64,000 bases of DNA from Macrostomum lignano. Taxonomy: Eukaryota. Of the stretch, positions 16,961 to 57,978 are shown one piece after another (position 1 is the stretch's first letter; each line of letters begins with the position of its first letter). A program made the position numbers and the translations under genes. The stretch spans positions 930,001 to 994,000 of the forward strand of contig NIVC01000038.1 in assembly GCA_002269645.1 (NCBI GenBank). The letters run 5' to 3'. The notes beneath the pieces are model-generated. The model was not told the origin of the DNA. It searched no databases and saw only the letters and a list, made by a program, of their open reading frames with translations.

Positions 16961-17379
16961 GGGGCGTAGATTGCTAGTATTAGCTATATTTTCATTTTCC
17001 TTTTTGCACTCCCCGAACGGGCTGGATTTCTAGTATTTACTAAACTTCAGCCGCAAAAAGTGTATACATCGTTACATTCTGTCTTGGCCTTGAAATTTGG
17101 AAGAAGCATTTTTGAGTTTGAATTGAACTCAAAATTGTTCAAAATGGAAGATCAATTGGTGCACTAAAAATTTTAACTGTTAAAACAAATGATGCTTTAG
17201 TAAAATCCAGTGAAACTGAGTTTGTGTATTTTAATTGGCGACGGAGACAGCAACAGACTGGCTCGCAGCTGAAGGTACAACAAAGGTCAAACAAATTACG
17301 CACTTGTTTAAATGAAACATCTGGACCCCACATACAGGAGACCCAAAAGAGCGGAGCGCTGCAATAGCCTCAAGTAAAT

Positions 17380-18990
17380 TACAGAGATTTATCACGCTGT
17401 GACAGTACATTACAGAGATTTATCACGCTGTGACAGTACATTACAGAGATTTATCACGCTGTGACAGTACATTACAGAGATTTATCACGCTGTGACAGTA
17501 CATTACAGAAGTTTATCATGCTGTTACAGTACATTACAGAAGTTTATCATGCTGTTACAAGTACATTACAGAAGTTTATCATGCTGTTACAGTACATTAC
17601 AGAAGTTTATCGTGCTGTTACAAGTACATTACAGAAGTTTATCATGCTGTTACAGTACATTACAAAAGTTTATCATGCTGTTACAAGTACATTACAGAAG
17701 TTTATCATGCTGTTACAGTACATTACAGAAGTTTATCATGCTGTTACAGTACATTACAGAAGTTTATCATGCTGTTACAGTACATTACAGAAGTTTATCA
17801 TGCTGTTACAGTACATTACAGAAGTTTATCATGCTGTTACAAGTACATTACAGAAGTTTATCATGCTGTTACAGTACATTACAGAAGTTTATCGTGCTGT
17901 TACAAGTACATTACAGAAGTTTATCATGCTGTTACAGTACATTACAGAAGTTTATCATGCTGGAACAGTACATTACAGAAGTTTATCATGCTGGAACAGT
18001 ACATTACAGAAGTTTATCATGCTGTTACAAGTACATTACAGAAGTTTATCATGCTGTTACAGTACATTACAGAAGTTTATCATGCTGTTACAGTACATTA
18101 CAGAGATTTATCACGCTGTGACAGTACATTACAGAAGTTTATCATGCTGTTACAGTACATTACAGAAGTTTATCATGCTGTTACAGTACATTACAGAAGT
18201 TTATCATGCTGTTACAGTACATTACAGAAGTTTATCATGCTGGAACAGTACATTACAGAAGTTTATCATGCTGTTACAAGTACATTACAGAAGTTTATCA
18301 TGCTGTTACAGTACATTACAGAAGTTTATCATGCTGTTACAGTACATTACAGAGATTTATCACGCTGTGACAGTACATTACAGAAGTTTATCATGCTGTT
18401 ACAGTACATTACAGAAGTTTATCATGCTGTTACAGTACATTACAGAAGTTTATCATGCTGTTAAAGTACATTACAGAAGTTTATCATGCTGTTACAGTAC
18501 ATTACAGAAGTTTATCATGCTGTTACAGTACATTACAGAAGTTTATCATGCTGTTACAGTACATTACAGAAGTTTATCATGCTGTTAAAGTACATTACAG
18601 AAGTTTATCATGCTGTTACAGTACATTACAGAAGTTTATCATGCCTTGACAGTACATTTCAGAAGTTTATCATGCCTTGACAGTACATTTCAGAAGTTTA
18701 TCACGCTGTTACAGTACATTATCATGCTGTTACAGTAAATTACAGGGATTTATCATGCTGTTACAGTAAATTACAGAGATTTATCATGCCGTGACAATAA
18801 ATTACAGAGTTTTATCATGCCGTGACAGTGAATTACAGAGATTTATCATGCTGGGAGAATACAATACAGAAATCTATCATGCTGTTACAGTAAATTACAG
18901 AAAATTATCATGCTGTGACAATACATTACAGAAATTTATCATGCTGTTACAATACATTACAGAAATTTATCATGCTGGGACAGTACATTA
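17380..18990. repeat. 29-30 bp minisatellite (acagtacattacagaagtttatcatgctgtt)
   Basis: More than 50 tandem copies, which explain the ORFs at 17461-18994. Confidence 0.97.
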
Positions 18991-19236
18991 CTGAGATCTA
19001 TCATGTCAAGCGTGAAGTATTGCTATAGAAACAGTCAACAGAGGGTTACCAATTGCTCACAGGCTGAGCAGCAAAGATGCGATGCTCCTGCAATTCCCTA
19101 CTAATATACGCTGCTGAAATAAAATCAAGGATGAGCTTCAAACATTGAGCTCAGAGAGCCATTTGCAATGAATTGAAACTGAAGCCAGTGACCGATCCAA
19201 ACCGCTATGCAGAGAGCTGCCGATTCGAACTCAGGA

Positions 19237-21571
19237 CTATTCTTCAGTGTCCGAGTCGTCATCATTTCTCCTGCACTTCTGCACCAGAATATAGATGAAC
19301 TCAAGCAGCTCAAATGTGCTCACGACGCTGATGCCGAGCCAGAGTCCCAGAGTTCCTCCAATCTGCGGGATATGGAGAAAGCATGCAGTACTCAAATTTT
19401 TGAGCAGATGTCAAAACAGCTGCTGCCCTGTTGCTAGGGAAGAAACTGGGCAGAAGCTCAGTGCGGCCAAAGGAACCGTAGCGGGATGTCAGTGCGGGAT
19501 GTCTGAAATGCGGGAATATTGCAACCGGATGCAGCTCTCACCTCTGACAGGGCCTCAGTCCAGTGGTACTTGTACTTCTCTTCGTAAGCATCCGCCGCAG
19601 GACTCTGCAAGCTGATGCTGACTGCTGCCAGCTCTTTGGCCAGTTCGCTACGAGAAACGCAAGACGTTGCAGATTCAATAATTTTTTTTTTATAATCTTT
19701 ACCCAAGAGTCGGTCAATAAAATTAAATTTTCTTAAAAAATTGAAACGGCAATAGTCGCTCCCACGGGCTAGCAAATACAGCTGAATTTCCTGCCTGGTT
19801 TTGGTGCTGTTCCTAAATATGTGATGCTCTTTGCCATCCTCGGGCAGGAACTCGACTCCATGTCTGACTTGCGGCACCATCAGGTTCTCCCAGATCTCTT
19901 GAATGGCGCTGAACGGGGGCCACCTGCGGCTCTGCTGCCAAGGCCGTTGCTGAGTGAACTGGCACCACATCCGGTGCTGGAACTCCTTCGCCAGCTCCTC
20001 GCTTTGCCTCTGTGCGTGCTCAAACCAGTGATCATGGCAGTCAATTCTCTTGAGCACAGCATCCGATGGGGTGATCCACTCCTGTGGTGGAGCGAAGTAG
20101 CAAAGGTCGCTCGTATTTACCGAGAACGGGAGCAGGTGCGAATAGCAGCCGCAGTTGCTGTGCAGGATGCTCTGCTGTGCCTCGACTACGAAATCGGAGA
20201 CGGACTTTGAGTAGGCCTTGGTGACCACGTTCAGCGAGGCGTTGGAGAAGTGCCTGACATAGTTGATGGTTTCGATTGGAGGCTCGGAGCATCTGCGGCT
20301 CGGCTTCGACATGAGTCGGTTGTGGACCGGCCTGAGTTTGATGGAGGTGCTGGTGGCTGAGGCCACGTCCACGAACTCGGTCTCTGCGGTTTTGCATGGG
20401 TTTGGCATGGGTTGTGAGACTGGTTTGGCATGGGTTGTGCGTGGGCTATGAGACTGGTTTGCCATGGGCTGTGAGACTGGTTTGCCATGGGTTGTGCATG
20501 GGTTGTGAGACTGGTTTGGCATGGGTTGTGAGACTTTCGTGGAATGAAGCAGTTTCAACTAAAACATTAAAACTTATTAAAGGTTTATCTAAATATAAGA
20601 AAAAAGATTACTATATTGACACTAAATTAAGCAACTAATTTATTAAGTTTTGGGCTACTTTTTGCTGCAAAAAACTAATTCGCGGGTAGCGAAGCAAAAT
20701 TACGCACCGCTCATCGGGAAGCTTTTCTCCTCGTGAATGAAGATGCGCAATCCAGCGGACTGCGGCTCGTTGCTCTGCAGCAACCGGTTGACGGCTTTGC
20801 TGCGTAAGAACTTGCGAGTGATGCAGCCGTCGGGCAGTGCTCCATTTGGGTAAATTTCATACAAGTCGGGATACTTCTCGTTGCTATCGGTGAAGAGCAC
20901 CATGTCCAGCTCGGCTCCCCTGCCCCAGGACCGCTGGACGACTGCCGTGGGTCCGGGTGGAACGTGTAGCAGTTCCAGAACCGGCTGGTCTGGACAAGCG
21001 AGAAGTTCTTGTGACTGCACGGCTCGCTGTTGTAGCGGCAGCTCAGCAGCATGGTCTCGTCGAGCTGGGAGATGTTTCTGGTGTCGCCCGATACCCACAT
21101 CACGTCCAGGACCTTCTTGCACACCTTCTCAAGTCGGTTATCATAGCTTTCATCCGATTCTTGCGGGCGCTTCTGGGTGTCCTCCTTGAACCAGTTGTCG
21201 AAGTTGCCCCAGAAGATTTCAAAGTAGTCAAACACCTCAAACTTAAACTCATTCTTAGAGTGGAATTCAAGGAAATTTATAATAGACAGCAGAGATGCAG
21301 AAGCGGGCTTGAAGTTGCAAATTGTGACGTCGGGAAACTGGGCTCGTTCGCTCCTCAGCTTCAGCTGCGACTCAACGGAGCGCTCGGTGAATTTCTGCAC
21401 CAACTTGGCCAAGTGGACGCTGCAGCCGATCAGGGCAGCTACGAACAGAAGCAGCCAGAAGAGCCGTCGAGCTGAGCCTCTGGACAGGAAGATGTGCAGC
21501 AAGCCGTGGGTTCTCGTGATGCCAGCCACCTCCTGGGCGGCACCGGTCACCGTGCGGAGTCGGGCTCGCAT
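19237..21571 (-). CDS. DEG/ENaC-family cation channel; exons 21571-20708 (one frameshift near 20917-20926), 20383-19542, 19362-19237
   Basis: It has the N-terminal THG motif, TM1 (RLFWLLLFVAALIG), FPDVTICN, SCRYNSEPC, CYTF, GLRIFIHE, CGC, RRWP and TM2 LSE/IGGTLGLWLGISVVSTFELLEF. Splice phases are consistent. One added base gives about 610 aa. Confidence 0.9.
20395..20535. repeat. Short minisatellite (gttgtgagactggtttggcatgg) in ENaC intron 1
   Basis: Tandem copies are visible. Confidence 0.85.
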
Positions 21572-29147: not shown

Positions 29148-32102
29148 ATGGCATCCTCTCATGTAAGCCGGTAGTTCTTTAGCATTAAAACTGTTATAGT
29201 TTCATGCTCATGCTATGACGATTCCCTCATAACCCCGTATCCTCTGCAGCCGAAATCCCTAATGACGGTGCAAGTTGGTCAAGCTGGGATACAAATTGGA
29301 CATGCGGTGTGGGAGCTGTTCTGTCTGGAGCACAACATATCGGCAGATGGCACCCCGAAACTGCACTGCGGCGATCTCGGCAATGTGGAGTCTGTGTTTG
29401 TGCCCACACCGAAGGGGCGCTACTTTCCCAGGAGCCTGTTTGTGGACACAGACCCCGCTTGCGTTGGTGAGATGAGATGGGGTCTCAGGGTGAGAGTAGA
29501 TAGGGTCTGAGGGTGATAATAGTAGATAGGGTCTGAGGGTGAGAGTAGATAGGGTCTGAGGGTGATGATAGTAGATAGGGTCTGAGGGTGAGAGTAGATA
29601 GGGTCTGAGGGTGATGATAGTAGATAGGGTCTGAGGGTGAGAGTAGATAGGGTCTGAGGGTGATGATAGTAGATAGGGTCTGAGGGTGAGAGTAGATAGG
29701 GTCTGAGGATGAGAGTAGATAGGGTCTGAGGGTGAGAGTAGATAGGGTCTGAGGATGAGAGTAGATAGGGTCTGAGGGTGAGAGTAGATCGGGTCTGAGG
29801 GTGAGAGTACAATGGTTGAGTCCCTGGTAAGAGAAATTGGCTAAACGGTTCTCCGTAAATCATGAAGCAGGTAAATCCCAGCCAGGAAGTTCATAGCAAA
29901 CTTTAATCGCAAAAAGTTCACCCGCCCTGAAACCGCCACCAGACGAGATGCGCTCAGGACCCTACAAGCAGCTGTTCAGCTCCCGACAGCTGCTCTCAGA
30001 CCAGGTGGACGCGGCCAGCAACTACACTACTGGTCGCTATGGTTACGCCAAGCGGCTGGTGCCGGACACGCTCGAACGACTGCGCTGGATGACTGAGAAG
30101 GCGGACTCGAAGCCGACGCTCTGTCTGGTGCACAGCGCCTGCGGCGGCACCGGCAGCGGCTTCGCCGTGGCCTGCCTCGCCAGGATGGCCGACGAACTGG
30201 GCATCGAGCCGCAGAACATCATCGATCTGTGCGTTGTGCCCGGCGTCTCCGCCGGCCAGAGCTCCTGCGAGCTGCTCAACACCGCCCTGTACCTGGACGA
30301 GTCGCAGGACCTGACCAGGCAGACCGTCTGCGTCTCCAACTCGGCGATGTTCCGCCTGTGCAACTCGCAGCTGCAGTCGCAGGGGGCGGCCACCTTCGCA
30401 CACGCCAACCGCGCCCTGGCAGCCGCCTTCAGCAACCTCACCGCCACGGAGCGCCTGCCCGGCTCCAGCGTCGGCCTGTCCGGCATCCTGGACAGCCTGC
30501 TGCCGTTCCGTCACCTGCGCTACACCCTGCTGGCCTGCGCTCCTTTCCTCACCACCGAGAACGCCAGGACAGAGCGTCCAACCGCCAAGTCCGCCACCGC
30601 GGCCGTGTTGGAGCTGTCCAGCCAGTTCCTCGACGTTGACCTCCGTCAGGGTCGCCACGCTGCCGGCTTCCTGTTGTACCGCGGCGACGCCAGTCTGGGC
30701 GAGGCGCAGAAACTGGCGGCGGAGCTGACCGCCCGAGGCCGAGTGCAGTTCCAGGACTGGGCGCCTACCGGCTTCCGCACCGGCGTTGTGACGCCTCCGC
30801 CAGTTGCTCCGCCTGGCAGCGGCTTCGCAGACGTCCCAATCTCCGCGACGCTGCTTGCCAGCCACTCTGGCATCTCCGACATCTTCGCCAAGCTGGCCGC
30901 GAGTTCCAGGAAGCTGCAAGACCGCGACATGTTCGTGCACAACTACGAAGGCGCGATTGTGTCTCTGCTGAACAAAACGGTGGAGGGGAGCAACGCCGGG
31001 ATGAATTTAGGGGCAGGCGGACCGGGGACCAACACGGACTCGGACTCGCAGAAACCAACCAGCCTGGACTCGGCCTCGGCCGATAACAACAGCGTGCGAA
31101 TGTGGATGAACCCGCCGGCGGCTCAGGCTGCGCTGGCTTCGGGCGGTGGTCGCGGTGAGCTGCAGAACTACCGGCGCAGGCGACTGACGTCCAGAGAGCC
31201 CGGCAGCCACGCCACCCAGAAGCCGCAGCAGCAGCAGCAAGAACAGCAGCAAGACGAGGAGGAGCCTCAGGTGTCGCGTACCTGCGCACTAAGCGACGTC
31301 TTCGGCGTTCGAGTCCGCCTATCATCGGCCATCGACTACCTGCAGCGTGTGTCGATCAGCTACGCCGCCGACAGTCAAACCGACGCAGGTGACGCCGCCG
31401 ATGTCGATGCTGCCGCAGTTGGCGACGAAAATGACGTCATCGGGGCGACTAACGGCGAGGAGGACGGCAAGGAGGACGAGGAGGAGACGGAGGGCGCCGA
31501 CGAGGAGGATGGAGAGGAGGGCAAGCAGCGAGTGGATAACAAGCTGCACGTGACCATCAATGATGTCGGCGGGATCGGCAGAGATCGGGAAAATGTCGAC
31601 TCCAATCGGTAAGAGGTCGTGGGCACCCCATGGCGCAATGCCTTTCGGCGAAATCGGTCCCGCAACCACCTCTGAGGCCAGATGCATTTACATGTAGCTT
31701 CTTACTCTGATGCAAAAACACAGGTCCGTTAGCGGCCAGTCTGCCCAGTCTGACTCAAAGCAACAACAGCAACAGCAGCAGCAGCAACAAGCGGACGGGA
31801 ACTCAGTCAGCGCAGAAGAGGAGCCGCAGGTTGAACCATCTCAGCAAAGCGAGCAGGCGGATCTCTCAGCCAGCAAAGACCCCAACGATCCTCCGGCGAA
31901 CAACGCCAACCAGCAGGGCGAGTTGCCTGTCCCAAGCAGTCGTTGGTGTCTCCGACGTCGCAGCAAGTCTCGCCGACCAGGCGAAGCCGCCGCCACCGCC
32001 GCCGCTGCCGCCGCCACTGCAGCAGCCGCTGGAAAACACCCCGCAATTGCTGAAGCCGAGAAAATTCTGATGAAGTACCAACGGAGTCTAGGCGGCCAAT
32101 GA
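29148..32102 (+). CDS. Highly divergent alpha-tubulin-like protein, 758 aa; exons 29148-29162, 29250-29466, 29943-31608, 31724-32102
   Basis: VQVGQAGIQIGHAVWELFCLEH, FPRSLFVD, VDEMRSGPYKQLF, DAASNY, HSACGGTGSG, LLYRGD, QFQDWAPTGFR and MFVHNY align in order with alpha-tubulin. Splice phases 0, 1, 2 are consistent. The TAA at 31610 overlaps a GTAAGA donor at 31609. Confidence 0.88.
29475..29805. repeat. Minisatellite (gagagtagatagggtctgagggt) in tubulin intron 2
   Basis: Tandem copies are visible. Confidence 0.9.
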
Positions 32103-40100: not shown

Positions 40101-43100
40101 AGACAGGCCGCTGATGATGTTGAACTCGTCCAGCTTCATGAGCCTGAAGACGGCGCTGGCGTGGTGATTCTCCAGCACGCCTTTGTCATTGTACAGCAGG
40201 GCGAGCTCTGAGGCGGTGTTCACGTGAAAGTTATTGGTGGTTCCCGTGTGCTCGTAGTCGTGAATGATGGCGGCAAAAATGGTAGCGAAGATCTCCAGGT
40301 CTGTCAGCCAGTTCTGTTGGATCAAAGTGAGTTATTTGGTATAGTTGATGTCAGATTTTCTGTTTACAACGCCTCAATAATATAAACCCCCTATGTTTAT
40401 AGGTTTTTTAGCTCATAAATAAATGTGACAAGCTGGTTATCAAACTGATCACAAGGACAAAAAGTTTTCTGCTAAAGATGTTAAACAATAGGTCAATCTG
40501 AATGATTTCTTTGTCAAATGGATTTAAGACTGCTGTCCTGATGGTTGAACAAATTTTCAAATTTTAACAATCAATTATTGTTGGTATAGACTAACGAACG
40601 AGAATTTGACAAAAGAGATGAAAGGGGATGACAAGAAATCAGAGTAGATGGCTGTAGATGAGAGGAGAGATCAGAAGGGATGAGATGAGATAAGATAAAA
40701 GTAGATGAGAGGAGATGGGGAAGGTGGGGGAGACGAGGGGAGATAAAAGGAGATGAGGGGAGATTAAAATAAGATGAAAGAAACTGAGAGGAAGAGAAGA
40801 GAGGAAGAGATGAGAGAAGAAGACATGAGATGAGTGGAGATGACAGCAGATGACAGGAGATGAGTGGAGATGAGAGGAGATGAGAGGAGATGAGGGGAGA
40901 TGAGAGGAAATGAGAGGAGATGAGAGGAGATGAGGGGAGATGAGAGGAGATGAGAGGAGATGAGGGGAGATGAGAGGAAATGAGAGGAGATGAGAGGAGA
41001 TGAGGGGAGATGAGAGGAGATGAGAGGAGATAAGGGGAGATGACAGGAGATGAGTGGAGATGAGAGGAGATGAGAGGAGATGAGGGGAGATGAGAGGAAA
41101 TGAGAGGAGATGAGAGGAGATGAGGGGAGATGAGAGGAGATGAGGGGAGATGAGTGGAGATGAGAGGAGATGAGAGGAGATGAGGGGAGATGAGAGGAGA
41201 TGAGAGGAGATAAGGGGAGATGAGTGGAGATGAGAGGAGATAAGGGGAGATGAGTGGAGATGAGTGGAGATGAGAGGAGATAAGGGGAGATGAGTGGAGA
41301 TGAGGGGAGATGAGAGGAGATGAGGGGAGATGAGAGGAGATGAGAGGAGATAAGGGGAGATGACAGGAGATGAGTGGAGATGAGAGGAGATGAGAGGAGA
41401 TGAGGGGAGATGAGAGGAAATGAGAGGAGATGAGAGGAGATGAGGGGAGATGAGAGGAGATGAGAGGAAATGAGTGGAGATGAGTGGAGATGAGAGGAGA
41501 TGAGAGGAGATGAGGGGAGATGAGAGGAGATGAGAGGAGATAAGGGGAGATGAGTGGAGATGAGAGGAGATGAGGGGAGATGAGTGGAGATGAGTGGAGA
41601 TGAGAGGAGATAAGGGGAGATGAGTGGAGATGAGGGGAGATGAGAGGAGATGAGGGGAGATGAGAGGAGATGAGAGGAGATAAGGGGAGATGACAGGAGA
41701 TGAGTGGAGATGAGAGGAGATGAGAGGAGATGAGGGGAGATGAGAGGAAATGAGAGGAGATGAGAGGAGATGAGGGGAGATGAGAGGAGATGAGAGGAGA
41801 TAAGGGGAGATGAGTGGAGATGAGAGGAGATGAGAGGAGATGAGGGGAGATGAGAGGAGATGAGAGGAGATAAGGGGAGATGAGTGGAGATGAGAGGAGA
41901 TGAGAGGAGATGAGGGGAGATGAGAGGAGATGAGAGGAGATAAGGGGAGATGAGTGGAGATGAGAGGAGATAAGGGGAGATGAGTGGAGATGAGTGGAGA
42001 TGAAAGGAGATGAGGGGAGATGAGAGGAGATGAGAGGAGATGAGGGGAGATGAGAGGAAATGAGAGGAGATGAGGGGAGATGAGAGGAAATGAGAGGAGA
42101 TGAGAGGAGATGAGGGGAGATGAGTGGAGATGAGAGGAGATAAGGGGAGATGAGTGGAGATGAGAGGAGATAAGGGGAGATGAGTGGAGATGAGTGGAGA
42201 TGAAAGGAGATGAGGGGAGATGAGAGGAGATGACAGGAGATGAGTGGAGATGAGAGGAAATGAGGGGAGATGAGTGGAGATGAGTGGAGATGAGTGGAGA
42301 TGAGAGGAGATGAGTGGAGATGAGTGGAGATGAGAGGAGATGAGTGGAGATGAGAGGAAATGAGGGGAGATGAGTGGAGATGAGTGGAGATGAGTGGAGA
42401 TGAGAGGAGATGAGTGGAGATGAGTGGAGATGAGGGGAGATGAGTGGAGATGAGAGAAGGGAACGCAGAAGATAAAACGCCAGATGAAGAGGAGATCCAA
42501 GAGAAAACTGCAGCCCAGAGAGGACGGCCTTCCCAGGAACGCAGCCCAACCCATCCGCATCAGCGAAGTCGGACATGCAATCCGCCGCTGTTAGCAGCTC
42601 ATCGCAGCTTCTCCAGCCTCCCGCCTCATCTCCGCTAAAATCTGTGGCGGCGCAGCGCAGCGTGAAGCGAAGCTCTATCATCAAAGAGGCTGCGAGCGAA
42701 ATGCAATCTACATGAATTTCTCATCAATCTACCTGACACTTTCTTAAATTGCATTCAGGGTTGCTGGGCTAGCAAGGCCGCTCATTTTTTTGGCGTCAGA
42801 CCTCCCGGCCCGAATAATGAGTTTTCCGAGTTTCGGATTTTTTGGCTATTAGGCTCTTCTCGAGTTTCTGATTAAGTCTGTTGACTCTCGGCTGGAAACT
42901 GAAAATTACAGCGGCTAAGCGTTTCGGTGTCCATTTCGTCAGCTTGCAATTTTCGTAATCTGTCCTTCTTCCAGATTTTCACTCTTCCATATTGTCACTC
43001 TTCCATCCCGTCACTCTTCCATATTGTCACTCTTCCATATTGTCACTCTTCCATCCCGTCACTCTTCCACCTCGTCACTCTTCCATCCCCTCACTCTTCC

Positions 43101-49100: not shown

Positions 49101-52100
49101 AAGCCCGCTTGTTAATCCAGGTTTTGCTTCTACTAACTCAGTGTGGTCTCCTTGGTCATACAGGACAGGCCACAGGGGATTGGCACTTTAAAAAAAGCTC
49201 CAGATGCGACTGCCCGGCAGGGGGTCATCAAACTGATCCCCGAGGCCGTCAAACTTGATCCTGATCAGCCGTGTATAGAAAGTTAGACCGACAAAATGGT
49301 CACAGGCAGAAAACGAAGGAGTTCGAGAGCTTCCCAGCGGGATAGGGGAGGCTCTTAATCGAGCCGATAGGCAGATCTACTTGACATTTTGTGATAGCGA
49401 CTGCCTCGCCTTGATTTGGACTTATTTGATCATCAGTTGAGGTGCAGCCACTTGCTCAATAGTTTATCAATTGGCCCCTGATGAGCCGCTTAACTATGCA
49501 GCTCTTTACTGCTCTGTCTTTATTCCTGTCTCTCTCCTGTCTGCCTTCCTGTCTCTCACTTCCTGTCTGTCTGACTGTCTCTCTCCTGTCTGCCTTCCTG
49601 TCTCTCACTTCCTGTCTGTCTGACTGTCTCTCTCTTGTCTGCCTTCCTGTCTCTCACTTCCTGTCTGTCTGACTGTCTCTCTCCTGTCTGCCTTCCTGTC
49701 TCTCACTTCCTGTCTGTCTGACTGTCTCTCTCTTGTCTGCCTTCCCGTCTCTCACTTCCTGTCTGTCTGACTGTCTCTCTCTTGTCTGCCTTCCTGTCTC
49801 TCACTTCCTGTCTGTCTGACTGTCTCTCTCCTTGTCTGCCTTCCTGTCTCTCACTTCCTGTCTGTCTTCATGTCTGTCTTTCTGTCTGTCTTCCTGTCTG
49901 TCTTCCTATCTGACTTCCTGTCTGTCTTCATGTTCGTCTTCCTGTCTGTCATCATGTCCGTCTTTCTGTCTGTCTTTCTGTCTGTCTTCATTTCCGTCTT
50001 CCTGTCTGTCTTCCTGTCTGTCTTCATGTTCGTCTTCCTGTCTGTCATCATGTCTACCTTCCTGTCTCTCTCCTTGTCTACCTTCCTGTCTGTCTCCCTG
50101 TCTGTCTGATTGTCTGTCTTTCTGTCTGTCTTCCGTCTCTCTTGACTGTCTATCTTCCCTTCTCTCTTCCTGTCTCTCTGTCTCTTTCTCTGTCTCTCCG
50201 TTTCTCCTCGTCTTTGAGTCTCCCCGCCAATCATGTTGCTTGACCTTAAAAATATTTTGTAATCAACTTTAATCCACCTATCTGCAGATTGTAAGGCCAT
50301 AAAAATCCCAGGATCACACTGTTGGGAATCTGCACTTCAGCTGAAATGCACTCAAGTTTATTTTTCAGCTTGCGGAGAGAGAGATGGCACCGTGTATGAA
50401 TCTAATGGAAAAATAATTAAGCCGCAATAAAATAAAAAAGTTTGTTGAGCTCACCGAATCGAGCAGGAGTAGCTGGCCTCGGCTTCGCCAGGGGCGGGCA
50501 TCCTGTCCGGGTCCAGGTCTGGGTCCGAGCTTATGGCGGCCTCCGCCTGCGGAACACTCCGGTTCAAAGCTCGGTTCGGGCTCGCGAAGTCAGCCTCTGA
50601 AGGTGTGAGGTGTTGGACTGCGTCAGTCAGTCAGTCAGTCAGTCAGTCAGTCAGTCAGTCAGTCAGTCAGTCAGTCAGTCAGTCAGTCAGTCAGTCAGTC
50701 AGTCAGTCAGTCAGTCAGTCAGTCAGTCAGTCAGTCAGTCAGTCAGTCAGTCAGTCAGTCAGTCAGTCAGTCAGTCAGTCAGTCAGTCAGTCAGTCAGTC
50801 AGTCAGTCAGTCAGTCAGTCAGTCAGTCAGTCAGTCAGTCAGTCAGTCAGTCAGTCAGTCAGTCAGTCAGTCAGTCAGTCAGTCAGTCAGTCAGTCAGTC
50901 AGTCAGTCAGTCAGTCAGTCAGTCAGTCAGTCAGTCAGTCAGTCAGTCAGTCAGTCAGTCAGTCAGTCAGTCAGTCAGTCAGTCAGTCAGTCAGTCAGTC
51001 AGTCAGTCAGTCAGTCAGTCAGTCAGTCAGTCAGTCAGTCAGTCAGTCAGTCAGTCAGTCAGTCAGTCAGTCAGTCAGTCAGTCAGTCAGTCAGTCAGTC
51101 AGTCAGTCAGTCAGTCAGTCAGTCAGTCAGTCAGTCAGTCAGTCAGTCAGTCAGTCAGTCAGTCAGTCAGTCAGTCAGTCAGTCAGTCAGTCAGTCAGTC
51201 AGTCAGTCAGTCAGTCAGTCAGTCAGTCAGTCAGTCAGTCAGTCAGTCGACCTCAGTCTGCACAAAAATACGAATAAAATCTATCCCTAATTCCTTTAGA
51301 CCTCACTCAGCTATCCCACATCCCGCAACCCTCCTCATCGCGTTTTTTCAGCTTCATCGGGCGCGGGACGCTTGTCTCCTCAGAGCAAAGTAGCTGATGC
51401 TATCTGAATTATTAGATTTTCTAGCTGAGGAACTTCTCAGTTGGGGGATGCGAGGAAATGAGGGACTATGGATTTCGAATTGTTCCGATGGTGGGCTGCC
51501 CTATGTGCCTGCACTTTTACTGCCCGGGGTAAACAGCTAAGTTTTTGGGAAAACTTGTGAGTCATTTTCTCGGCTATGGTGTCCACGGGTGTATGTCTTT
51601 GTTCTAAAGTGTGTCTTTGGTCTAGTGTGTGTGTGTGATTGGTCTAAAGTGTGTGTGTTTGGTCTAAAGTGTGTGTCTTTAGTCTAAAATGTGTCTTTGG
51701 CCTAAAGTGTCTGTAGTCTAAAGTGCGTGTCTTTGGTCTAAAGTGTGTGTCTTTAGTCTAAAGTGTGTGTCTTTAGTCTAAAGTGCGTGTCTTTATTCTA
51801 AAGTGTGCCTTTGGTCTAAAGTGTGCCTTTGGTCTAAAGTGTGCCTTTGGTCTAAAGTGTGTCTTCTTGGTGTAAGTTTCTTTAGTCTAAAGTGTGTCTT
51901 TGTCTAAAGTGTGTCTTGTTGGTCTAAAGTATATCTTTAGTCTAAAGTGTGCCTTTGGTCTAAAGTGTGCCATTTGTCTAAAATGTATGTCTTCGGTCTA
52001 AAGTGTGTCTTTGGTCTAAAGTGCGTGTCTTTGGTCTAAAGTGCGTGTCTTTGGTCTAAAGTGCGTTTCTTTGGTCTAAAGTGCGTGTCTTTGGTCTAAA

Positions 52101-55100
52101 GTGCGTGTCTTTGGTCTAAAGTGCGTGTCTTTGGTCTAAAGTGCGTGTCTTTGGTCTAAAGTGCGTGTCTTTGGTCTAAAGTGCGTGTCTTTGGTCTAAA
52201 GTGCGTGTCTTTGGTCTAAAGTGCGTGTCTTTGGTCTAAAGTGCGTGTCTTTGGTCTAAAGTGCGTGTCTTTGGTCTAAAGTGTGTGTCTTTGGTCTAAA
52301 GTGTGTGTTTTTGGTCTAAAGTGCGTGTCTTTGGTCTAAAGTGTGTGTCTTTGGTCTAAAGTGTGTGTTTTTGGTCTAAAGTGCGTCTTTGGTTTAAAGT
52401 GTGTGTCTTTGGTCTAAAGTGTGTGTTTTTGGTCTAAAGTGCGTCTTTGGTTTAAAGTGTGTGTCTTTGGTCTAAAGTGTGCCTTTGGTCTAAAGTGTGC
52501 CATTTGTCTAAAATGTATGTCTTCGGTCTAAAGTGCGTGTCTTTGGTCTAAAGTGCGTGTCTTTGGTCTAAAGTGTGTGTCTTTGGTCTAAAGTGCGTGT
52601 CTTTGGTCTAAAGTGTGTGTCTTTGGTCTAAAGTGCGTGTCTTTGGTCTAAAGTGCGTGTCTTTGGTCTAAAGTGCGTGTCTTTGGTCTAAAGTGCGTGT
52701 CTTTGGTCTAAAGTGTGTCTTTGGTCTAAAGTGCGTGTCTTTGGTCTAAAGTGCGTCTTTGGTTTAAAGTGTGTGTCTTTGGTCTAAAGTGTGTCTTTGG
52801 TCTAAAGTGTGTTTTGGTTTATAGTGTGTCTTCTTGGTCTAAAGTGTATTTACGCTCTAAAATGTGTCTTTGGCTTAAAGTTTGTGTTTTTGGTCCAAGT
52901 GTGTTAGTAGTGTATAACGTGCCTTTCGTTCACCAAAGTAAGTATCTAATCTAGAAGTGTGTCGAGCGAGGTTAATCAATTGAATTCCAGCAGTTTTGAG
53001 CCGAATTCTGACAGGATCAGTGAGATACCGGAGAGTGCAGACCAAGCAAAGAGCATTGAAAATCGAAAACCTATATTGTTGCCAATGCGGGTCTACTCAC
53101 ATTCTTAAAGTTGACTCGTGAAATGCTGATCTCAAAAAAAATCCAGAACATATCCAGTCGAACTTTGAGTTGAGTGTTTTGATTTTTGTGTGTACTGTTC
53201 GATGAATCGAACACTTCTTGCTTGAGTTTGGTGGAGGGTTTTTCTAGCAAAAAATCACATCTCTAGGATGAGGCCGGTGCAGTATCTGTTTTAAGCTACA
53301 CCCGTTCCTCGTCACAACCAATACCGAAAGCAAACCAATGGGAAGCCGTTCAATGGGAGTTTTTTCTGGGACACTTCCTGTTTGACTGATTCATAACAAA
53401 AACAAATAATGAAATAGCTAATGAAGAATAAATAGAAATAATTAGAACTACAAAATAGTTATTTTGTAGCATACTTAACCCAGAATATTTAAGCGGCAGT
53501 GAAGTTCCTTGAAACTCTTATTAAAAGACAGAATTCCAAGAAAAAATTTTTGAAGGATCACAGACATTCCTGGAAATATTTTATTGAAGGGCCACAGTCA
53601 TTCCTGGAAAGACATTTTTGAACTGCCACAGTCATTCCTGGAAAGACATTTTTGAAACATTCCTGGAAAGGCATTTTTGAAGGGCCGCAGACATTCCTGG
53701 AAACATTTTATTGAATGGCCGCAGACATTCCTGGAAAGGCATTTTTGAAGGGCCACAGACATTCCTGGAAAGGCATTTTTGAAGGGCCGCAGACATTCCT
53801 GGAAAGGCCTTTTTGAAGACCGCAGACATTCCTGGAAAGGCCTTTTTAGAAGGGCCGCAGACATTCCTAGAGACCAGAATATTTTAGCGACTGTTGTGGA
53901 TAATCAGTGATTTCACAGCCATGAATTTTTTTTAAAAATCTAAAAATTTTAAGGTCATTGAAATTCCCGGAAGCACCACGGACGTTCCAGAAAAGCACAT
54001 TTCTACAAAACATTTTGACTGAGCACATATTAGTTGGATGAAGTATATAAAAAAGCAAAAAAATGCGTCAGTTAGATTGATAAAAGGGCCATGCATTTTT
54101 TCTGTACTGACCTTATCAACCTCGATGTTAAAGGGGTTGACAGCCGAAAATATATTTAATATTTCTCCGATTTTCGGGACAGAAAATCGAAACGTTTGTA
54201 GCGATCCCGGTCTGGTTAGCTTCGGGCTGTTTCGAAAAATCGATATTTTTACAAAATTAAACATCGAGTTCTTTACTTATAGTAGACACACACAAATCTA
54301 GGACATTGTTATCTAAATTGTTATTTACAAAATTATTTTTTTCATTTATCGATAAAATGGAAACCTTTGCAGGATAAAATTAATGACCCTTCAATAAATG
54401 GCCCTTCAATAAAAAAATTAATTATTTTTATCAAACAATTTGACTTTTGAACACATAAAAGCGCATAAAATCGCAAAAGTGCTCACTTGCCGACTCAACC
54501 AGAATTTGAGGTCTGTGACATCTCGCATTCTCATCCATGGCTCAATCAGAAATATCCTTCCTTTGAGCTTGCTGTTTGAGTTTTAACAGATAGTCAAGAC
54601 TTTACTTTTCTGTCAAAAATTGCAACCTCTCTGCATAGCAACGAATACAGTGATAAATACACTGCACTGTCTCAACTGCTTGGATCTAAAAATGCACCAA
54701 TGGCAGGGCAGGGATCTGCTTGGGTTAGCGATCGGCCAATGGCTGCCTCAGTTTCGTTACATTCGTTCTTCACTTCACTTGCATGTGGGGATGAAGTGTG
54801 CAGAGAGGCGGCGGATGAACCATTCAAAGGTGGAGATGGGGGCGGGGAGGACGGAGAGCAAGGCTGAGGACGAGAATAGGAGACATTGCGGAGGAGTAGA
54901 CGAGAGGGAGATGGCAGCAGCGAGAGGAGAGAGATGGCAGAAGAGAGAGGAGAGAGATGGCAGAAGAGAGAGGAGAGAGATGGCAGCAGAGAGGAGAGAG
55001 ATGGCAGAAGAGAGAGGAGAGAGATGGCAGAAGAGAGAGGAGAGAGATGGCAGCAGAGAGGAGAGAGATGGCAGAAGAGAGAGGAGAGAGATGGCAGAAG

Positions 55101-57978
55101 AGAGAGGAGAGAGATGGCAGCAGAGAGGAGAGAGATGGCAGAAGAGAGAGGAGAGAGATGGCAGAAGAGAGAGGAGAGAGATGGCAGCAGAGAGGAGAGA
55201 GATGGCAGAAGAGAGAGGAGAGAGATGGCAGCAGAGAGGAGAGAGATGGCAGCAGAGAGTAGAGAGATGGCAGCAGCGAGAGGAGAGAGATGGCAGAAGA
55301 GAGAGGAGAGAGATGGCAGAAGAGAGAGGAGAGAGATGACAGCAGAGAGAGGTGAGAGATGGCAGCAGAGAGAGGAGAGATGACAGCAGAGAGAGGTGAG
55401 AGATGGCAGCAGAGAGAGGTGAGAGATGGCAGCAGAGAGAGGTGAGAGATGGCGGCAGAGAGAGGTGAGAGATGGCAGCAGAGAGAGGTGAGAGATGGCA
55501 GCAGAGAGAGGTGAGATGACAGCAGAGAGAGGTGAGATGGCAGCAGAGAGAGGAGAGATGGCAGAAGAGAGAGGTGAGATGGCAGCAGAGAGAGGAGAGA
55601 GATGGCAGCAGAGAGAGGAGAGATGGCAGAAGAGAGAGGAGAGAGATGGCAGCAGAGAGAGTAGAGAGATGGCAGCAGAGAGAGTAGAGAGATGGAAGCA
55701 GAGAGAGGAGAGAGATGGCAGCAGAGAGAGGAGAGAGATGGCAGCAGAGAGAGGAGAGATGGCAGCAGAGAGGAGAGAGATGGCAGCAGAGAGGAGAGAG
55801 ATGGCAGCAGAGAGGAGAGAGATGGCAGCAGAGAGGAGAGAGATGGCAGCAGAGAGGAGAGAGATGGCAGCAGAGAGGAGAGAGATGGCAGCAGAGAGGA
55901 GAGAGATGGCAGCAGAGAGGAGAGAGATGGCAGCAGAGAGGAGAGAGATGGCAGCAGAGAGGAGAGAGATGGCAGCAGAGAGGAGAGAGATGGCAGCAGA
56001 GAGGAGAGAGATGGCAGCAGAGAGGAGAGAGATGGCAGCAGAGAGGAGAGAGATGGCAGCAGAGAGGAGAGAGATGGCAGAAGGGAGAGAAGAGACGACA
56101 AGAGTTTAGGGGCAGCAATAATGTATAAAAGGGATTTTCACTCGGCACAATCCTGCACACTTTTTCCCAGCCATCACAAATAAACTTGTAAGCTGAAAAA
56201 AATTGATTTTCGTTCAAAGCTGAGCCGGCAATCAGCGAGAATCCATCAAAGCAAGAGGCAAATCAAATGGTCAATTCGGAGCCGAATGAAAGATGGGAGA
56301 GAGAAAAGGAAAGAAAAAATAAATCTGAATGAATTTTGGCACCGGAGCGGCAGCACCCCAGTCAGCAGCTCTGGGAGGGTGCTGGGGAACTGGCGGTGCC
56401 CTACATTTCACTCCACATTTCATGGATTGCAATGTCTTAAAGCCTTATGTCGAGTGACGCGTGGAGAGAGAGGGGGCGAAGAGAGGGCGGAGGGCGGAGA
56501 GAGGGCGGATATGGGTGGAGGATTTCCGGAGAAAAGGGCGGAGAGAGGGGGCGGCGGAGAGAGGGGCGGAGAGAGATGGGCGGAGAGAGGGCGGAGAGAG
56601 GGCGGGGAAAGGGCGGAGAGAGGGGCGGAGAGAGGGCGGAGGAAGAGGGCGGAGCGAGGGTCGGAGAGAGATAGGTGGAGAGAGAGGCGAAGAGAGGGGC
56701 GAGAGAGGGGCGGAAAGAGGGGCGGAGAGAGGGGCGGAGAGAGGGGCGGAGAGAGGGGCGGAAAGAGGGGCGGAGAGAGGGGCGGAGAGGGGGCGGAGAC
56801 AGGGGCGGAGACAGGGGCGGAGAGAGGGGCGGAGAGAGGGGCGGAGAGAGATGGGCGGAGAGAGGGGCGGAGAGAGATGGGCGGAGAGAGAGGCGGAGAG
56901 AGGGGCGGAGAGAGAGGCGGAGAGAGGGGCGGAAAGAGGGGCGGAGAGAGGGGCGGAGAGAGGGGCGGAGAGATGGGCGGAGACAGGGGCGGAGAGAGGG
57001 GCGGAGAGAGGGGCGGAGAGAGGGGCGGAGAGAGGGGCGGAGAGAGGGGCGGAGAGAGGGGCGGAGAGAGGGGCGGAGAGAGGGCGGAGGAAGAGGGCGG
57101 AGCGAGGGTCGGAGAGAGATAGGTGGAGAGAGAGGCGAAGAGAGGGGCGAGAGAGGGGCGGAAAGAGGGGCGGAGAGAGGGGCGGAGAGAGGGGCGGAGA
57201 GAGGGGCGGAAAGAGGGGCGGAGAGAGGGGCGGAGAGGGGGCGGAGACAGGGGCGGAGAGAGGGGCGGAGAGAGGGGCGGAGACAGGGGCGGAGAGAGAT
57301 GGGCGGAGAGAGGGGCGGAGAGAGATGGGCGGAGAGAGAGGCGGAGAGAGGGGCGGAGAGAGGGGCGGAGAGAGGGGCGGAAAGAGGGGCGGAGAGAGGG
57401 GCGGAGAGAGGGGCGGAGAGATGGGCGGAGACAGGGGCGGAGAGAGGGGCGGAGAGAGGGGCGGAGAGAGGGGCGGAGAGAGGGGCGGAGAGAGGGGCGG
57501 AGAGAGGGGCGGAGAGAGGGGCGGAGACAGGGGCGGAGAGAGAGGCGGAAAGAGGGGCGAAGAGAGGGGCGGAGAGGGGGGCGGAGAGAGGGGCGGAGAG
57601 AGGGGCGAAGAAAGGGGCGGAGAGAGGGGCGGAGAGAGGGCGGAGAGAGGGGCGGAGAAAGGGGCGGAGAGAGGGGCGGAAAGAGGGGCGGAGAGAGAAG
57701 CGGAGAGAGGGGCGGAGAGAGGGGCGGAGAGAGGGCGGAGGGAGGGGCGGAGAGAGGGGCGGAGAGAGGGGGCGGCGGAGAGAGGGGCGGCTATAGCAGA
57801 TAAAGGGATGCGAATAACACTGGAGCAGGCATAAAGAGGATTGAGTTTGTTAGGCGGCAGCGCATTCTGCAGGTATAAAAACGGGCAGGTAAAAAGCCCG
57901 CCTAAACAACAGGCAGTGAATGCTTTCTGTTCTAGCAAGCAGACAGCGGATTAAAAGACAGAAAATAATATTTTTTTC

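What the first reader, a model, noticed from the sequence alone, without database searches (positions are those of the whole stretch)
30953..31363. Tubulin helix H12 displaced by a ~115-residue insertion
After MFVHNYEG (alpha AFVHWYVGEG) the chain enters a G/S/Q/E-rich segment with an RRRRR patch. It then resumes LSSAIDYLQRVSISY, which matches H12 FSEAREDMAALEKDY in exact hydrophobic spacing (F/L, A, M/L, L/V, Y). The H11-H12 loop faces the outer surface where kinesin, dynein and MAPs bind, so a large disordered loop here could block or recruit motors. I know of no such insertion in described tubulins.
Basis: partly seen in the sequence, partly recalled or inferred. Interest (0 to 1): 0.7.

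Follow-up and report, generated by a model that had tools for sequence, protein, structure and literature searches.

The report
Divergent flatworm alpha-tubulin with surface-loop insertion
A flatworm (Macrostomum lignano) gene encodes a very divergent alpha-tubulin-like protein with about 120 extra, probably floppy, residues inserted just before the last structural helix; that is the outer surface where motor proteins dock, and such a variant has not been described and has no known function.

Summary
Window 29148-32102 (+) is a four-exon gene whose 758-aa product is identical to an uncharacterised Macrostomum lignano "tubulin domain-containing protein". Residues 1-414 are an alpha-type tubulin core, about 32% identical to canonical alpha-tubulins, and all sequence homology stops at MFVHNYEG.

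Residues 415-536 (30953-31318) are a low-complexity segment predicted to be disordered. They are coding:
- GC3 periodicity continues through them.
- All 6 differences from a second genomic copy are synonymous.
- RNA-seq-derived GenBank models include them.

LSSAIDYLQRVSISY (537-551) is predicted helical, and I think it is probably H12 (about 0.65-0.7). The evidence is indirect:
- A 46%-identical paralogue in the same species has a roughly 31-aa insert at the same site.
- AlphaFold2, given no H12 information, models the paralogue's following helix at pLDDT 83-87. Foldseek alignment lengths and RMSD imply that this helix occupies the H12 position.
- That helix's best match in this protein is 537-551.

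For this protein itself, docking could not be read because no coordinates were returned. The canonical H12 profile does not pick the segment.

No orthologue was found outside M. lignano. The catalytic residue E254 and R402 are both replaced. Any effect on motors is untested.

Verdict: a new variant of a known kind, of moderate interest.

The parts
29148..29162 (+). Exon 1 (M1-H5) of the divergent alpha-tubulin-like gene
   Evidence: This is the only GT/AG-consistent, stop-free exon combination. The resulting 758-aa product is 100% identical to UniRef A0A1I8J262 of Macrostomum lignano.
29250..29466 (+). Exon 2 (aa 6-77 plus the first base of codon 78), encoding the T1 loop GQAG, H1 and the H1-S2 loop
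   Evidence: The paralogue gene has an intron at the same position.
29943..31608 (+). Exon 3 (aa 78-632 plus two bases of codon 633): the rest of the tubulin core, the insert, the H12 candidate and the acidic stretch, all in one uninterrupted exon
   Evidence: GC3 is 0.86 in the core and 0.77 in the insert, against a flat 0.4-0.5 in the introns.
30473..30484 (+). T7 loop/H8 positions equivalent to alpha-tubulin D251 and E254, here G255 and G258, so the catalytic glutamate is lost
   Evidence: Pairwise mapping onto a canonical alpha-tubulin. The HMMER alignments agree.
30953..31318 (+). Insert of 122 aa (A415-R536) between H11' and the H12 candidate; low complexity and predicted disordered
   Evidence: - No homology to any tubulin beyond residue 414.
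- AF2 pLDDT is 27-46.
- Against the second genomic copy there are 6 synonymous and 0 nonsynonymous differences (neutral P = 2e-4).
- The insert is identical in all six annotated copies.
31172..31183 (+). RRRR patch (R488-R491) followed by LTS, a basophilic-kinase-like or NLS-like motif inside the insert
   Evidence: Read directly from the sequence. The motif interpretation is inference only.
31319..31369 (+). H12 candidate helix.
   Evidence: - AF2 models a helix with pLDDT 51-72 between disordered flanks.
- It is the best window on the buried H12 positions (P = 0.008).
- It is the best match in this tail to the paralogue's H12 15-mer (score 22, P = 0.036).
31364..31528 (+). Acidic stretch (aa 552-606, 42% D+E), placed where the tubulin C-terminal tail would start
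   Evidence: Composition. Across aa 552-632 there are 5 nonsynonymous and 0 synonymous differences between the two copies.
31724..32102 (+). Exon 4 (aa 633-758 plus the stop): polyQ, poly-A, a basic patch and the C-terminal helix
   Evidence: The GT donor lies at 31609 and the AG acceptor before 31724. The frame continues to the stop at 32100-32102.
32040..32087 (+). C-terminal amphipathic helix (aa 739-754, IAEAEKILMKYQRSL region), shared with the long isoform of the paralogue
   Evidence: - AF2 models a helix at pLDDT about 71.
- A Smith-Waterman alignment of the last 40 aa against P0275 scores 29, versus 15.5 +/- 3.1 in shuffles (P = 0.0015).
- MAFFT also aligns the two segments.

Best explanation
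The window carries a transcribed, selectively maintained gene of Macrostomum lignano for a lineage-restricted, highly divergent alpha-tubulin-like protein.

Shown:
- The globular core (aa 1-414) keeps the alpha-type fold, the S9-S10 loop and most GTP-binding residues.
- The core has lost the T7/H8 catalytic pair D251/E254 and the motor-site residue R402.

Inferred, with moderate support:
- After H11' the chain leaves the body as a disordered loop of about 120 residues.
- It returns as an amphipathic helix (537-553), which most likely fills the H12 groove.
- It then leaves again as an acidic stretch and a further tail of about 150 residues that ends in a conserved helix.

Speculative:
- If the protein pairs with beta-tubulin and enters a lattice, the loop and tail would both project from the outer surface at the kinesin/dynein/MAP site, like a built-in projection domain.
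- The missing E254 would stop it from triggering GTP hydrolysis in the neighbouring beta subunit, which would favour stable polymers.
For: Gene and identity:
- The exon model is 100% identical to A0A1I8J262.
- Pfam finds Tubulin (1.4e-32) and Tubulin_C (3e-15).
- The best PDB matches are all alpha-tubulins (E about 1e-70), and every alignment ends at residue 414.

The insert is coding:
- GC3 is 0.77 in the insert against flat introns, and the only strong-consensus (GT[AG]AG) donor in the segment is paired only with acceptors lacking a polypyrimidine tract.
- Differences from the homeologous copy L003 are 6 synonymous and 0 nonsynonymous in the insert, and 11 and 3 in the core.
- The GenBank BOX15_Mlig033756 models contain the insert. 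Those models derive from RNA-seq-guided assembly (PMC5730564).

Disorder and helix: AF2 gives pLDDT 27-46 for 423-535 and a helix at 537-553 with pLDDT up to 72.

Paralogue (P0126, Mlig018576, 46% identical):
- It has a G/S-rich insert of about 31 aa at the same junction, followed by IVGLLKEASDHLEGLAQVYS.
- With an alignment that held no canonical H12 sequences, AF2 models that helix at pLDDT 83-87.
- All top Foldseek alignments to alpha-tubulin have 459-471 columns at 2.8-3.5 A. This equals the core, a gap of about 31 residues, and H12.
- Its 15-mer matches P0001 best at 537-551.
- The paralogue's long isoform has both this helix and the C-terminal motif. The motif is therefore a separate element and not H12.

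Key residues are mapped.

Rarity: H12 lies 8 residues after the H11' motif in 289 of 297 scorable tubulins. The exceptions are false motif matches, duplications and one truncated fragment; a few further low-scoring sequences with long tails lack a clear H12 (a fusion among them), and none shows an insertion at this junction.
Against: - The full canonical H12 profile does not select 537-551 (rank 139 of 320). HMMER and BLAST see nothing after residue 414.
- Docking of 537-553 in this protein could not be verified. No coordinates or PAE were returned, and Foldseek alignments stop at H11'.
- Its pLDDT of 51-72 is compatible with a free amphipathic helix.
- For the paralogue, the H12 placement is deduced from alignment length and RMSD, not from a residue map.
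- The tails of P0001 and P0126 show no significant overall similarity (Smith-Waterman 40, versus 46 +/- 7 in shuffles).
- No orthologue from another species is available to test conservation of the insert.
- There are no expression or localisation data.
- There is no evidence on polymerisation or on a beta-tubulin partner.
Confidence: 0.62

Rival explanations
1. H12 has been lost or has degenerated. Everything after residue 414 is then one long, mostly disordered C-terminal extension. Helices 537-553 and 739-754 would be unrelated amphipathic elements, for example partner-binding motifs, and the H12 groove would be empty or remodelled.
For: - There is no profile or BLAST similarity to H12.
- The hydrophobic pattern is generic.
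- pLDDT at 537-553 is only 51-72.
- Other flatworm alpha-tubulins carry long C-terminal extensions, such as the 534-aa Dugesia ryukyuensis A7M6D9 and the 704-aa P0168.
Against: - The paralogue's equivalent helix is modelled at pLDDT 83-87, and Foldseek places it at the H12 site.
- Those flatworm tubulins with long tails keep a canonical H12 directly after H11'.
- An acidic stretch follows 551, as it does after a normal H12.
- A tubulin core without H12 would expose a large hydrophobic groove.
Confidence: 0.22
2. The true H12 equivalent is the C-terminal helix 739-754 (IAEAEKILMKYQRSL). The insertion would then be about 325 residues long.
For: - It fits the same hydrophobic pattern.
- It scores slightly better than 537 on the 15-column canonical H12 core (-1.5 against -3.9).
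- Its IAEAEK resembles the canonical FSEARE.
- Its pLDDT is about 71.
- It is conserved in the long isoform of the paralogue.
Against: In the paralogue the H12 site is already filled by 490-509, and the long isoform P0275 also carries the C-terminal motif. The motif is therefore an extra element. No acidic tail follows it.
Confidence: 0.06
3. The insert is an annotation artefact, namely a retained intron or an unspliced model, and the mature protein has H12 close to H11'.
For: Read-level RNA-seq was not inspected here. One GTGAG lies at 31155.
Against: - Any in-frame excision would still have to join H11' to 537.
- The candidate acceptors lack polypyrimidine tracts.
- GC3 periodicity is in frame.
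- All six inter-copy differences are third-position synonymous changes.
- The transcript-derived GenBank models include the insert.
- The paralogue has an insert at the same site within a single exon.
Confidence: 0.03
4. The protein is a non-polymerising tubulin-fold protein, with a new non-microtubule function or a role as a cap or sequestering subunit. In that case the position of the loop on the 'microtubule outer surface' is irrelevant.
For: - It is only 32% identical to alpha-tubulins, which are normally more than 70% identical to each other.
- D251, E254, R402 and W407 are replaced, and N101 and T179 are changed.
- It is restricted to one lineage.
Against: - The fold, the GTP-site residues and the alpha-type S9-S10 loop are retained.
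- The core is under purifying selection (11 synonymous, 3 nonsynonymous).
- Human E254A and E254N alpha-tubulins still form microtubules, as shown by PDB entries 7sj9 and 7sja listed.
Confidence: 0.35

Closest known systems
Canonical alpha-tubulin (e.g. TUBA1A/B; PDB 1jff, 3j8x)
   Same: - It has the Tubulin/FtsZ GTPase and Tubulin_C domains.
- Its best hits are all alpha-tubulins.
- It has the alpha-type S9-S10 loop.
- GQAG, (C)GGTGSG, D69, D98, E183, N206 and N228 are kept, and Y224 is replaced by F.

   Different: - Identity is only about 32%.
- D251 and E254 are both G, R402 is D and W407 is N.
- About 120 aa are inserted between H11' and the H12 candidate.
- The acidic residues of H12 are not conserved.
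- About 200 aa follow H12, and there is no terminal EEY.

M. lignano paralogue Mlig018576 (P0126/P0273/P0275)
   Same: - It is 46% identical over the core.
- It shares an intron position.
- It also lacks D251, E254 and R402.
- It has an insert at the same H11'/H12 junction that begins with a similar G/S-rich stretch.
- It has a long tail, and its long isoform shares the C-terminal motif.

   Different: - Its insert is only about 31 aa.
- Its H12 is closer to canonical (LLKEASDHLEGLAQVY).
- It has no comparable acidic stretch directly after H12.

Flatworm alpha-tubulins with long C-terminal extensions (Dugesia ryukyuensis A7M6D9, 534 aa; P0168, 704 aa, source unknown)
   Same: They are divergent alpha-tubulins that carry long, low-complexity C-terminal extensions.
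   Different: They keep FVHWYVGEGMEEGEF..LEKDYEE directly contiguous, with no insertion before H12.
Catalytically dead human alpha-tubulin mutants E254A/E254N (PDB 7sj9, 7sja)
   Same: The same position lacks the glutamate: G in this protein and N in the paralogue. Both entries are listed.
   Different: Those are engineered point mutants of an otherwise canonical tubulin. That they give hyperstable microtubules is from my own knowledge of the literature and was not tested here.

Membership tests
Tubulin/FtsZ superfamily | Tubulin GTPase domain (PF00091) plus the tubulin C-terminal domain (PF03953) | tested here: met
   PF00091 scores 114 bits (cut-off 33) over aa 9-218. PF03953 scores 56.9 bits (cut-off 26.6) over aa 269-395. 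The AF2 core has pLDDT 80-95, and Foldseek top hits are tubulins at 2.2-2.8 A.
Alpha-tubulin | Closer to alpha than to beta or other tubulin classes | tested here: met
   All 60 listed PDB hits are alpha chains. Database alpha hits score 230-247 bits, while beta hits score at most 162 bits.
Alpha-tubulin | Alpha-specific extended S9-S10 loop (residues about 361-368) | tested here: met
   Residues 355-375 of the reference align without a gap.
Alpha-tubulin | Nucleotide-binding signature residues (T1 GQAG, T4 GGGTGSG, N206, Y224, N228) | tested here: met
   One search shows GQAG, CGGTGSG (the first G is C), N210, F229 (a conservative change from Y224) and N233. N101 is S, T179 is Q and E71 is D.
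Alpha-tubulin | Catalytic T7/H8 residues D251 and E254, which activate GTP hydrolysis in the adjoining beta subunit | tested here: not met
   Both positions are glycine, G255 and G258.
Alpha-tubulin | H12 directly after H11' (VGEGMEEGEF...LEKDYEE), followed by a short acidic tail ending in Y or F | tested here: not met
   Homology stops at residue 414. The H12 candidate lies 122 residues downstream. The acidic stretch is followed by about 150 more residues that end in GGQ.
Alpha-tubulin | Forms a heterodimer with beta-tubulin and polymerises into microtubules | not testable with these tools
   This needs biochemistry, in vivo tagging, or at least an AF2-multimer run. No multimer tool was available.
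   For this protein, a helix is predicted at pLDDT 51-72 but its placement could not be read. For the paralogue, the helix has pLDDT 83-87, and Foldseek alignments of 459-471 columns at about 3 A imply H12 placement.

The most novel reading that the evidence does not exclude
Macrostomum has evolved a genetically encoded 'self-decorated' tubulin. This alpha-like subunit would still pair with beta-tubulin and build GTP-locked, hyperstable microtubules, because E254 is absent. The motor-binding ridge of those microtubules would be masked, or given a new specificity, by an internal loop of about 120 aa and a tail of about 200 aa. The polymer could serve a specialised structure such as the cortical microtubules or bristles of the aflagellate sperm.
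Probability: 0.15. Interest if true: 0.8.

Novelty: new variant of a known kind. Interest (0 to 1): 0.5.

Why it matters
The ridge formed by H11', H12 and the C-terminal tail is the docking site for kinesins, dynein and many MAPs. It is among the most conserved protein surfaces in eukaryotes. Known variation there comes from short tails and post-translational modifications, not from large loops encoded in the gene.

A natural tubulin with a constrained loop of about 120 residues at that point, and without the catalytic E254 or R402, would be useful in three ways:
- It would be a natural experiment on how much the outer surface can be remodelled.
- It could be a route to stable microtubules that exclude motors.
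- It would show that H12 can be tethered by a long linker.

M. lignano has RNAi and transgenesis (PMC5730564), so the idea can be tested directly. If the protein turns out not to polymerise, it would instead be an example of a tubulin fold recruited to a new role.

Tried and rejected
- **HMMER with a 106-sequence canonical profile, filters off:** no second domain for H12.
- **Full-length H12 position-specific scoring of the tail:** the best hit is the acidic stretch, because of composition, and not 537.
- **Smith-Waterman alignment of the P0001 and P0126 tails:** not significant.
- **AIVSLLNKTVEG (415-426) as a shortened H12 directly after H11':** rejected. AF2 models it at pLDDT below 50. When Foldseek forces it onto H12, the RMSD rises from 2.2-2.8 A to 8-10 A.
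- **MAFFT with full-length canonical sequences (A2):** it mis-aligned canonical H12 onto the acidic stretch 594-629. I therefore did not use A2 for structure prediction and used homologues cut after H11' instead.
- **Two truncated alignments for the paralogue (A5, A6):** discarded because MAFFT pushed the last 10 residues onto the paralogue's C-terminus. Adding P0001 as a bridge fixed this, giving A7.
- **Orthologue searches:** two word-indexed searches, one profile search and one exhaustive HMMER search of 1.84 billion representatives found nothing closer than canonical alpha-tubulins, apart from the M. lignano paralogue.
- **Expression data:** the gene IDs do not occur in the paper library or in the supplements of two M. 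lignano papers.
- **Literature search for H11-H12 loop insertions:** it returned only papers on MAP binding and on the R402H mutation.
- **Apparent H11'/H12 insertions in other retrieved tubulins** (P0311, P0371, P0256, P0164): these are duplications or fusions in gene models.
Full report
**What is in the window.** The finding lies inside a four-exon gene on the + strand, with exons at 29148-29162, 29250-29466, 29943-31608 and 31724-32102. This is the only combination of GT/AG sites that gives a stop-free frame. Its 758-aa product is 100% identical to UniRef A0A1I8J262, "Tubulin domain-containing protein" of the free-living flatworm Macrostomum lignano. Five more copies, 98-99% identical, are annotated in that genome. 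Three of them are GenBank BOX15_Mlig033756g1-3.

**The tubulin core.** Pfam finds the Tubulin GTPase domain (aa 9-218, 1.4e-32) and Tubulin_C (aa 269-395, 3e-15). Every one of the 60 listed PDB matches is an alpha-tubulin (E about 1e-70), and every alignment ends at query residue 414-415...MFVHNYEG. A profile of 106 canonical homologues, run with all HMMER filters off, also matches only 9-414.

**Check of the observation.**
- The coordinates are exact. 30953 starts codon A415, and 31319-31363 encode L537-Y551, LSSAIDYLQRVSISY.
- The intervening 122 residues are rich in S, Q, A and G, and net neutral.
- They contain RRRR (four arginines, not five) at 31172-31183.
A loose version occurs in 49% of shuffled tails and a stricter one in 14%. 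Two other real windows, at 530 and 741, also satisfy it.
- On the five buried positions of a canonical H12 profile, 537 is the best window in the tail (P about 0.008, chosen post hoc). On the full profile it ranks 139 of 320, because the exposed acidic residues of H12 are not conserved.
- Sequence alone therefore cannot decide the matter.

**Is the segment exonic?** Four independent lines say yes.
- GC at third codon positions is 0.77 in the insert and 0.86 in the core. The three introns are flat at 0.4-0.5. The only strong donor-like site, GTGAG at 31155, has no acceptor with a polypyrimidine tract.
- I compared exon 3 with a second genomic copy (L003, encoding P0123). The insert has 6 differences, and all are synonymous third-position changes in this frame. 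The probability of no nonsynonymous change among six under neutrality is 2e-4. The core has 11 synonymous and 3 nonsynonymous differences. The acidic stretch after the candidate helix has 0 synonymous and 5 nonsynonymous (Fisher P = 0.002 against the insert).
- The GenBank BOX15 models that contain the insert come from an RNA-seq-guided transcriptome assembly built with StringTie, TACO and the de novo assembly MLRNA150904 (PMC5730564).
- The paralogue described below has its insert at the same site inside a single exon.

Read-level RNA-seq was not available to me.

**Relatives.**
- An exhaustive HMMER search of 1.84 billion representative proteins found one relative closer than canonical alpha-tubulins. 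It is P0126 (E = 1.6e-117, 46% identical over the core), which is M. lignano BOX15_Mlig018576.
- Three word-indexed searches added nothing from any other species.
- This is therefore a two-member subfamily seen so far only in M. lignano. These databases may simply lack other macrostomids.
- The two genes share an intron position, after aa 77 of this protein.
- After CFLRSYET (equivalent to MFVHNYEG) the paralogue has a G/S-rich segment of about 31 residues. The start of that segment aligns with the start of this protein's insert. It is followed by IVGLLKEASDHLEGLAQVYS.
- That helix is the top-scoring window in the paralogue's tail in all three H12 profile variants, though it is not significant on its own (P = 0.07-0.22).
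- Its 15-mer finds its best ungapped match in this protein's 344-residue tail at exactly 537-551 (score 22, shuffle P = 0.036).

**Structure prediction.** I removed H12 from the evidence so that the alignment could not dictate its position. Each alignment held the query plus canonical alpha-tubulins cut directly after H11'. The paralogue's alignment also held P0001 as a bridge row. MAFFT places P0001's residues about 445-463, which are part of the insert and not its H12 candidate, opposite the paralogue's helix.

For this protein:
- The core is confident, with pLDDT 80-95.
- Residues 423-535 are at pLDDT 27-46, so predicted disordered.
- Three helices appear in the tail: 409-426 (pLDDT below 50), 537-553 (10-residue block means 51, 72 and 58) and 739-754 (about 71).
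- Foldseek against the PDB returns alpha-tubulins in two classes. One class has 410-416 columns at 2.2-2.8 A. The other has 437-444 columns at 8-10 A.
- The helix that directly follows H11' is therefore not at the H12 position.
- Foldseek cannot bridge a 122-residue gap, and the tool gives neither coordinates nor PAE. Whether 537-553 is docked in this model remains unknown.

For the paralogue:
- Helix 490-509 has pLDDT 83-87, between flanks at 30-43.
- All 50 top Foldseek alignments to alpha-tubulin have 459-471 columns at 2.8-3.5 A, with TM-score (normalised to the target) of 0.88-0.91.
- That length equals the core of about 410 columns, a gap of about 31, and about 20 residues of H12.
- I take this as good, though indirect, evidence that the paralogue's post-insert helix fills the H12 groove.

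**The C-terminal helix as a rival.** Residues 739-754 (IAEAEKILMKYQRSL) also fit the H12 pattern. However, the paralogue's long isoform (P0275) carries a similar motif at its own C-terminus, and its last exon is present in the genomic locus. A Smith-Waterman alignment of the last 40 residues scores 29, against 15.5 +/- 3.1 in shuffles (P = 0.0015). P0275 carries this motif in addition to helix 490-509. The motif is therefore a separate conserved element. This makes 537-553 the more economical H12 equivalent here.

**What kind of tubulin is this?** I mapped the sequence onto a canonical alpha-tubulin.
- Kept: GQAG, D69, D98, S140, (C)GGTGSG, E183, N206, N228 and the alpha-type S9-S10 loop. Y224 is replaced by F.
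- Changed: D251 and E254 are both G (N and N in the paralogue), R402 is D, W407 is N, N101 is S and T179 is Q.
- From established knowledge: E254 is the residue through which alpha-tubulin activates GTP hydrolysis in the beta subunit of the neighbouring dimer. R402 and the acidic face of H12 are central to dynein and kinesin binding. Human E254A and E254N tubulins still polymerise (PDB 7sj9 and 7sja appear).
- The protein therefore probably still binds GTP. If it is incorporated into a lattice, it could not trigger hydrolysis, and its motor-binding ridge is rewritten quite apart from the insert.

**How it most likely works.**
- Shown: the gene is intact, transcribed according to the annotation source, and under purifying selection in both the core and the insert. 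The insert is predicted to be disordered. A helix follows it.
- Inferred (about 0.65-0.7): that helix is H12, tethered by a long loop.
- Speculative: in a heterodimer or lattice, the loop and the roughly 200-aa tail would form a brush over the outer ridge, excluding or recruiting binding partners. The RRRRLTS motif could be a regulatory phosphorylation site. Polymers would be stable.
- It is equally open (about 0.35) that the protein does not polymerise and has another role.

**Comparison with known tubulins, and novelty.**
- Among 385 retrieved tubulins, 289 of the 297 with a scorable H12 have it 8 residues after the H11' motif. The exceptions are duplicated or fused gene models.
- Flatworm alpha-tubulins with long tails, such as the 534-aa Dugesia ryukyuensis protein, keep H12 contiguous with H11'.
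- A literature search for H11-H12 loop insertions found none.
- The protein itself is already in public databases, but only as "hypothetical" or "tubulin domain-containing".
- I rate the feature a new variant of a known kind. It passes the alpha-tubulin tests for fold, class and nucleotide site. It fails those for catalytic E254, a contiguous H12 and the canonical tail.

**Verdict.** The exonic, constrained and disordered nature of the insert is well supported. The H12 assignment is likely but not directly verified for this protein. The proposed consequence for motors is untested. Interest is moderate (0.5): the feature is an unusual remodelling of a very conserved surface in a tractable model animal, but it is known from one species and rests on prediction.

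Noticed in passing
window 30473-30484 (G255, G258); paralogue P0273 N256, N259: Both divergent alpha-like paralogues lack the T7/H8 residues D251 and E254 that alpha-tubulin uses to activate GTP hydrolysis in beta-tubulin. R402 is also replaced, by D406 here and S408 in the paralogue. The GTP-binding residues are largely kept.
   Followed up: partly
window 32040-32087 (aa 739-754); P0275 C-terminus; L001 10404-10769: A C-terminal amphipathic motif, G..P......K.hh.KY, lies at the same distance from the C-terminus in this protein and in the long isoform of the paralogue (P about 0.0015). This suggests a conserved terminal element of unknown role. The transcript-based model of the paralogue (P0126) ends differently from the older model (P0275).
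   Followed up: partly
window 31364-31608 (aa 552-632): The acidic stretch after the H12 candidate has 5 nonsynonymous and 0 synonymous differences between the two genomic copies. This is the opposite of the insert (0 and 6), so this stretch is relaxed or changing fast.
   Followed up: partly
window 29466-29809 (intron 2 of the tubulin gene): A minisatellite with a 23/49-bp unit (about 7-14 copies, 89-96% matches) fills most of intron 2. Its first copy starts at the splice donor.
   Followed up: no
whole window, e.g. 17373-19005, 40615-42456, 50622-51248, 54904-57790: The window is dominated by minisatellite and microsatellite arrays (62 TRF rows with score of 200 or more). Examples are a 31-bp unit in 53 copies, a 30-bp unit in 62 copies, and (GTCA)n in 157 copies. 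Many of the long 'ORFs' are read-throughs of these repeats.
   Followed up: no
window 20711-21571 (- strand), possibly continuing into 19458-20558: An ORF matches Pfam ASC, the amiloride-sensitive sodium channel (DEG/ENaC) family, at E = 2e-26. It is probably an exon of a neighbouring channel gene on the opposite strand.
   Followed up: no
L003 8421-9027 (- strand); L001 13850-15995: The neighbours of the other copies differ. A cyclic-nucleotide phosphodiesterase gene lies downstream of the homeologous tubulin copy, and a syntaxin/SNARE gene lies downstream of the paralogue.
   Followed up: no
aa 645-655 (window about 31758-31790): The polyQ run in exon 4 varies in length between copies: 10 Q here and 5 Q in the other five annotated copies.
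   Followed up: no
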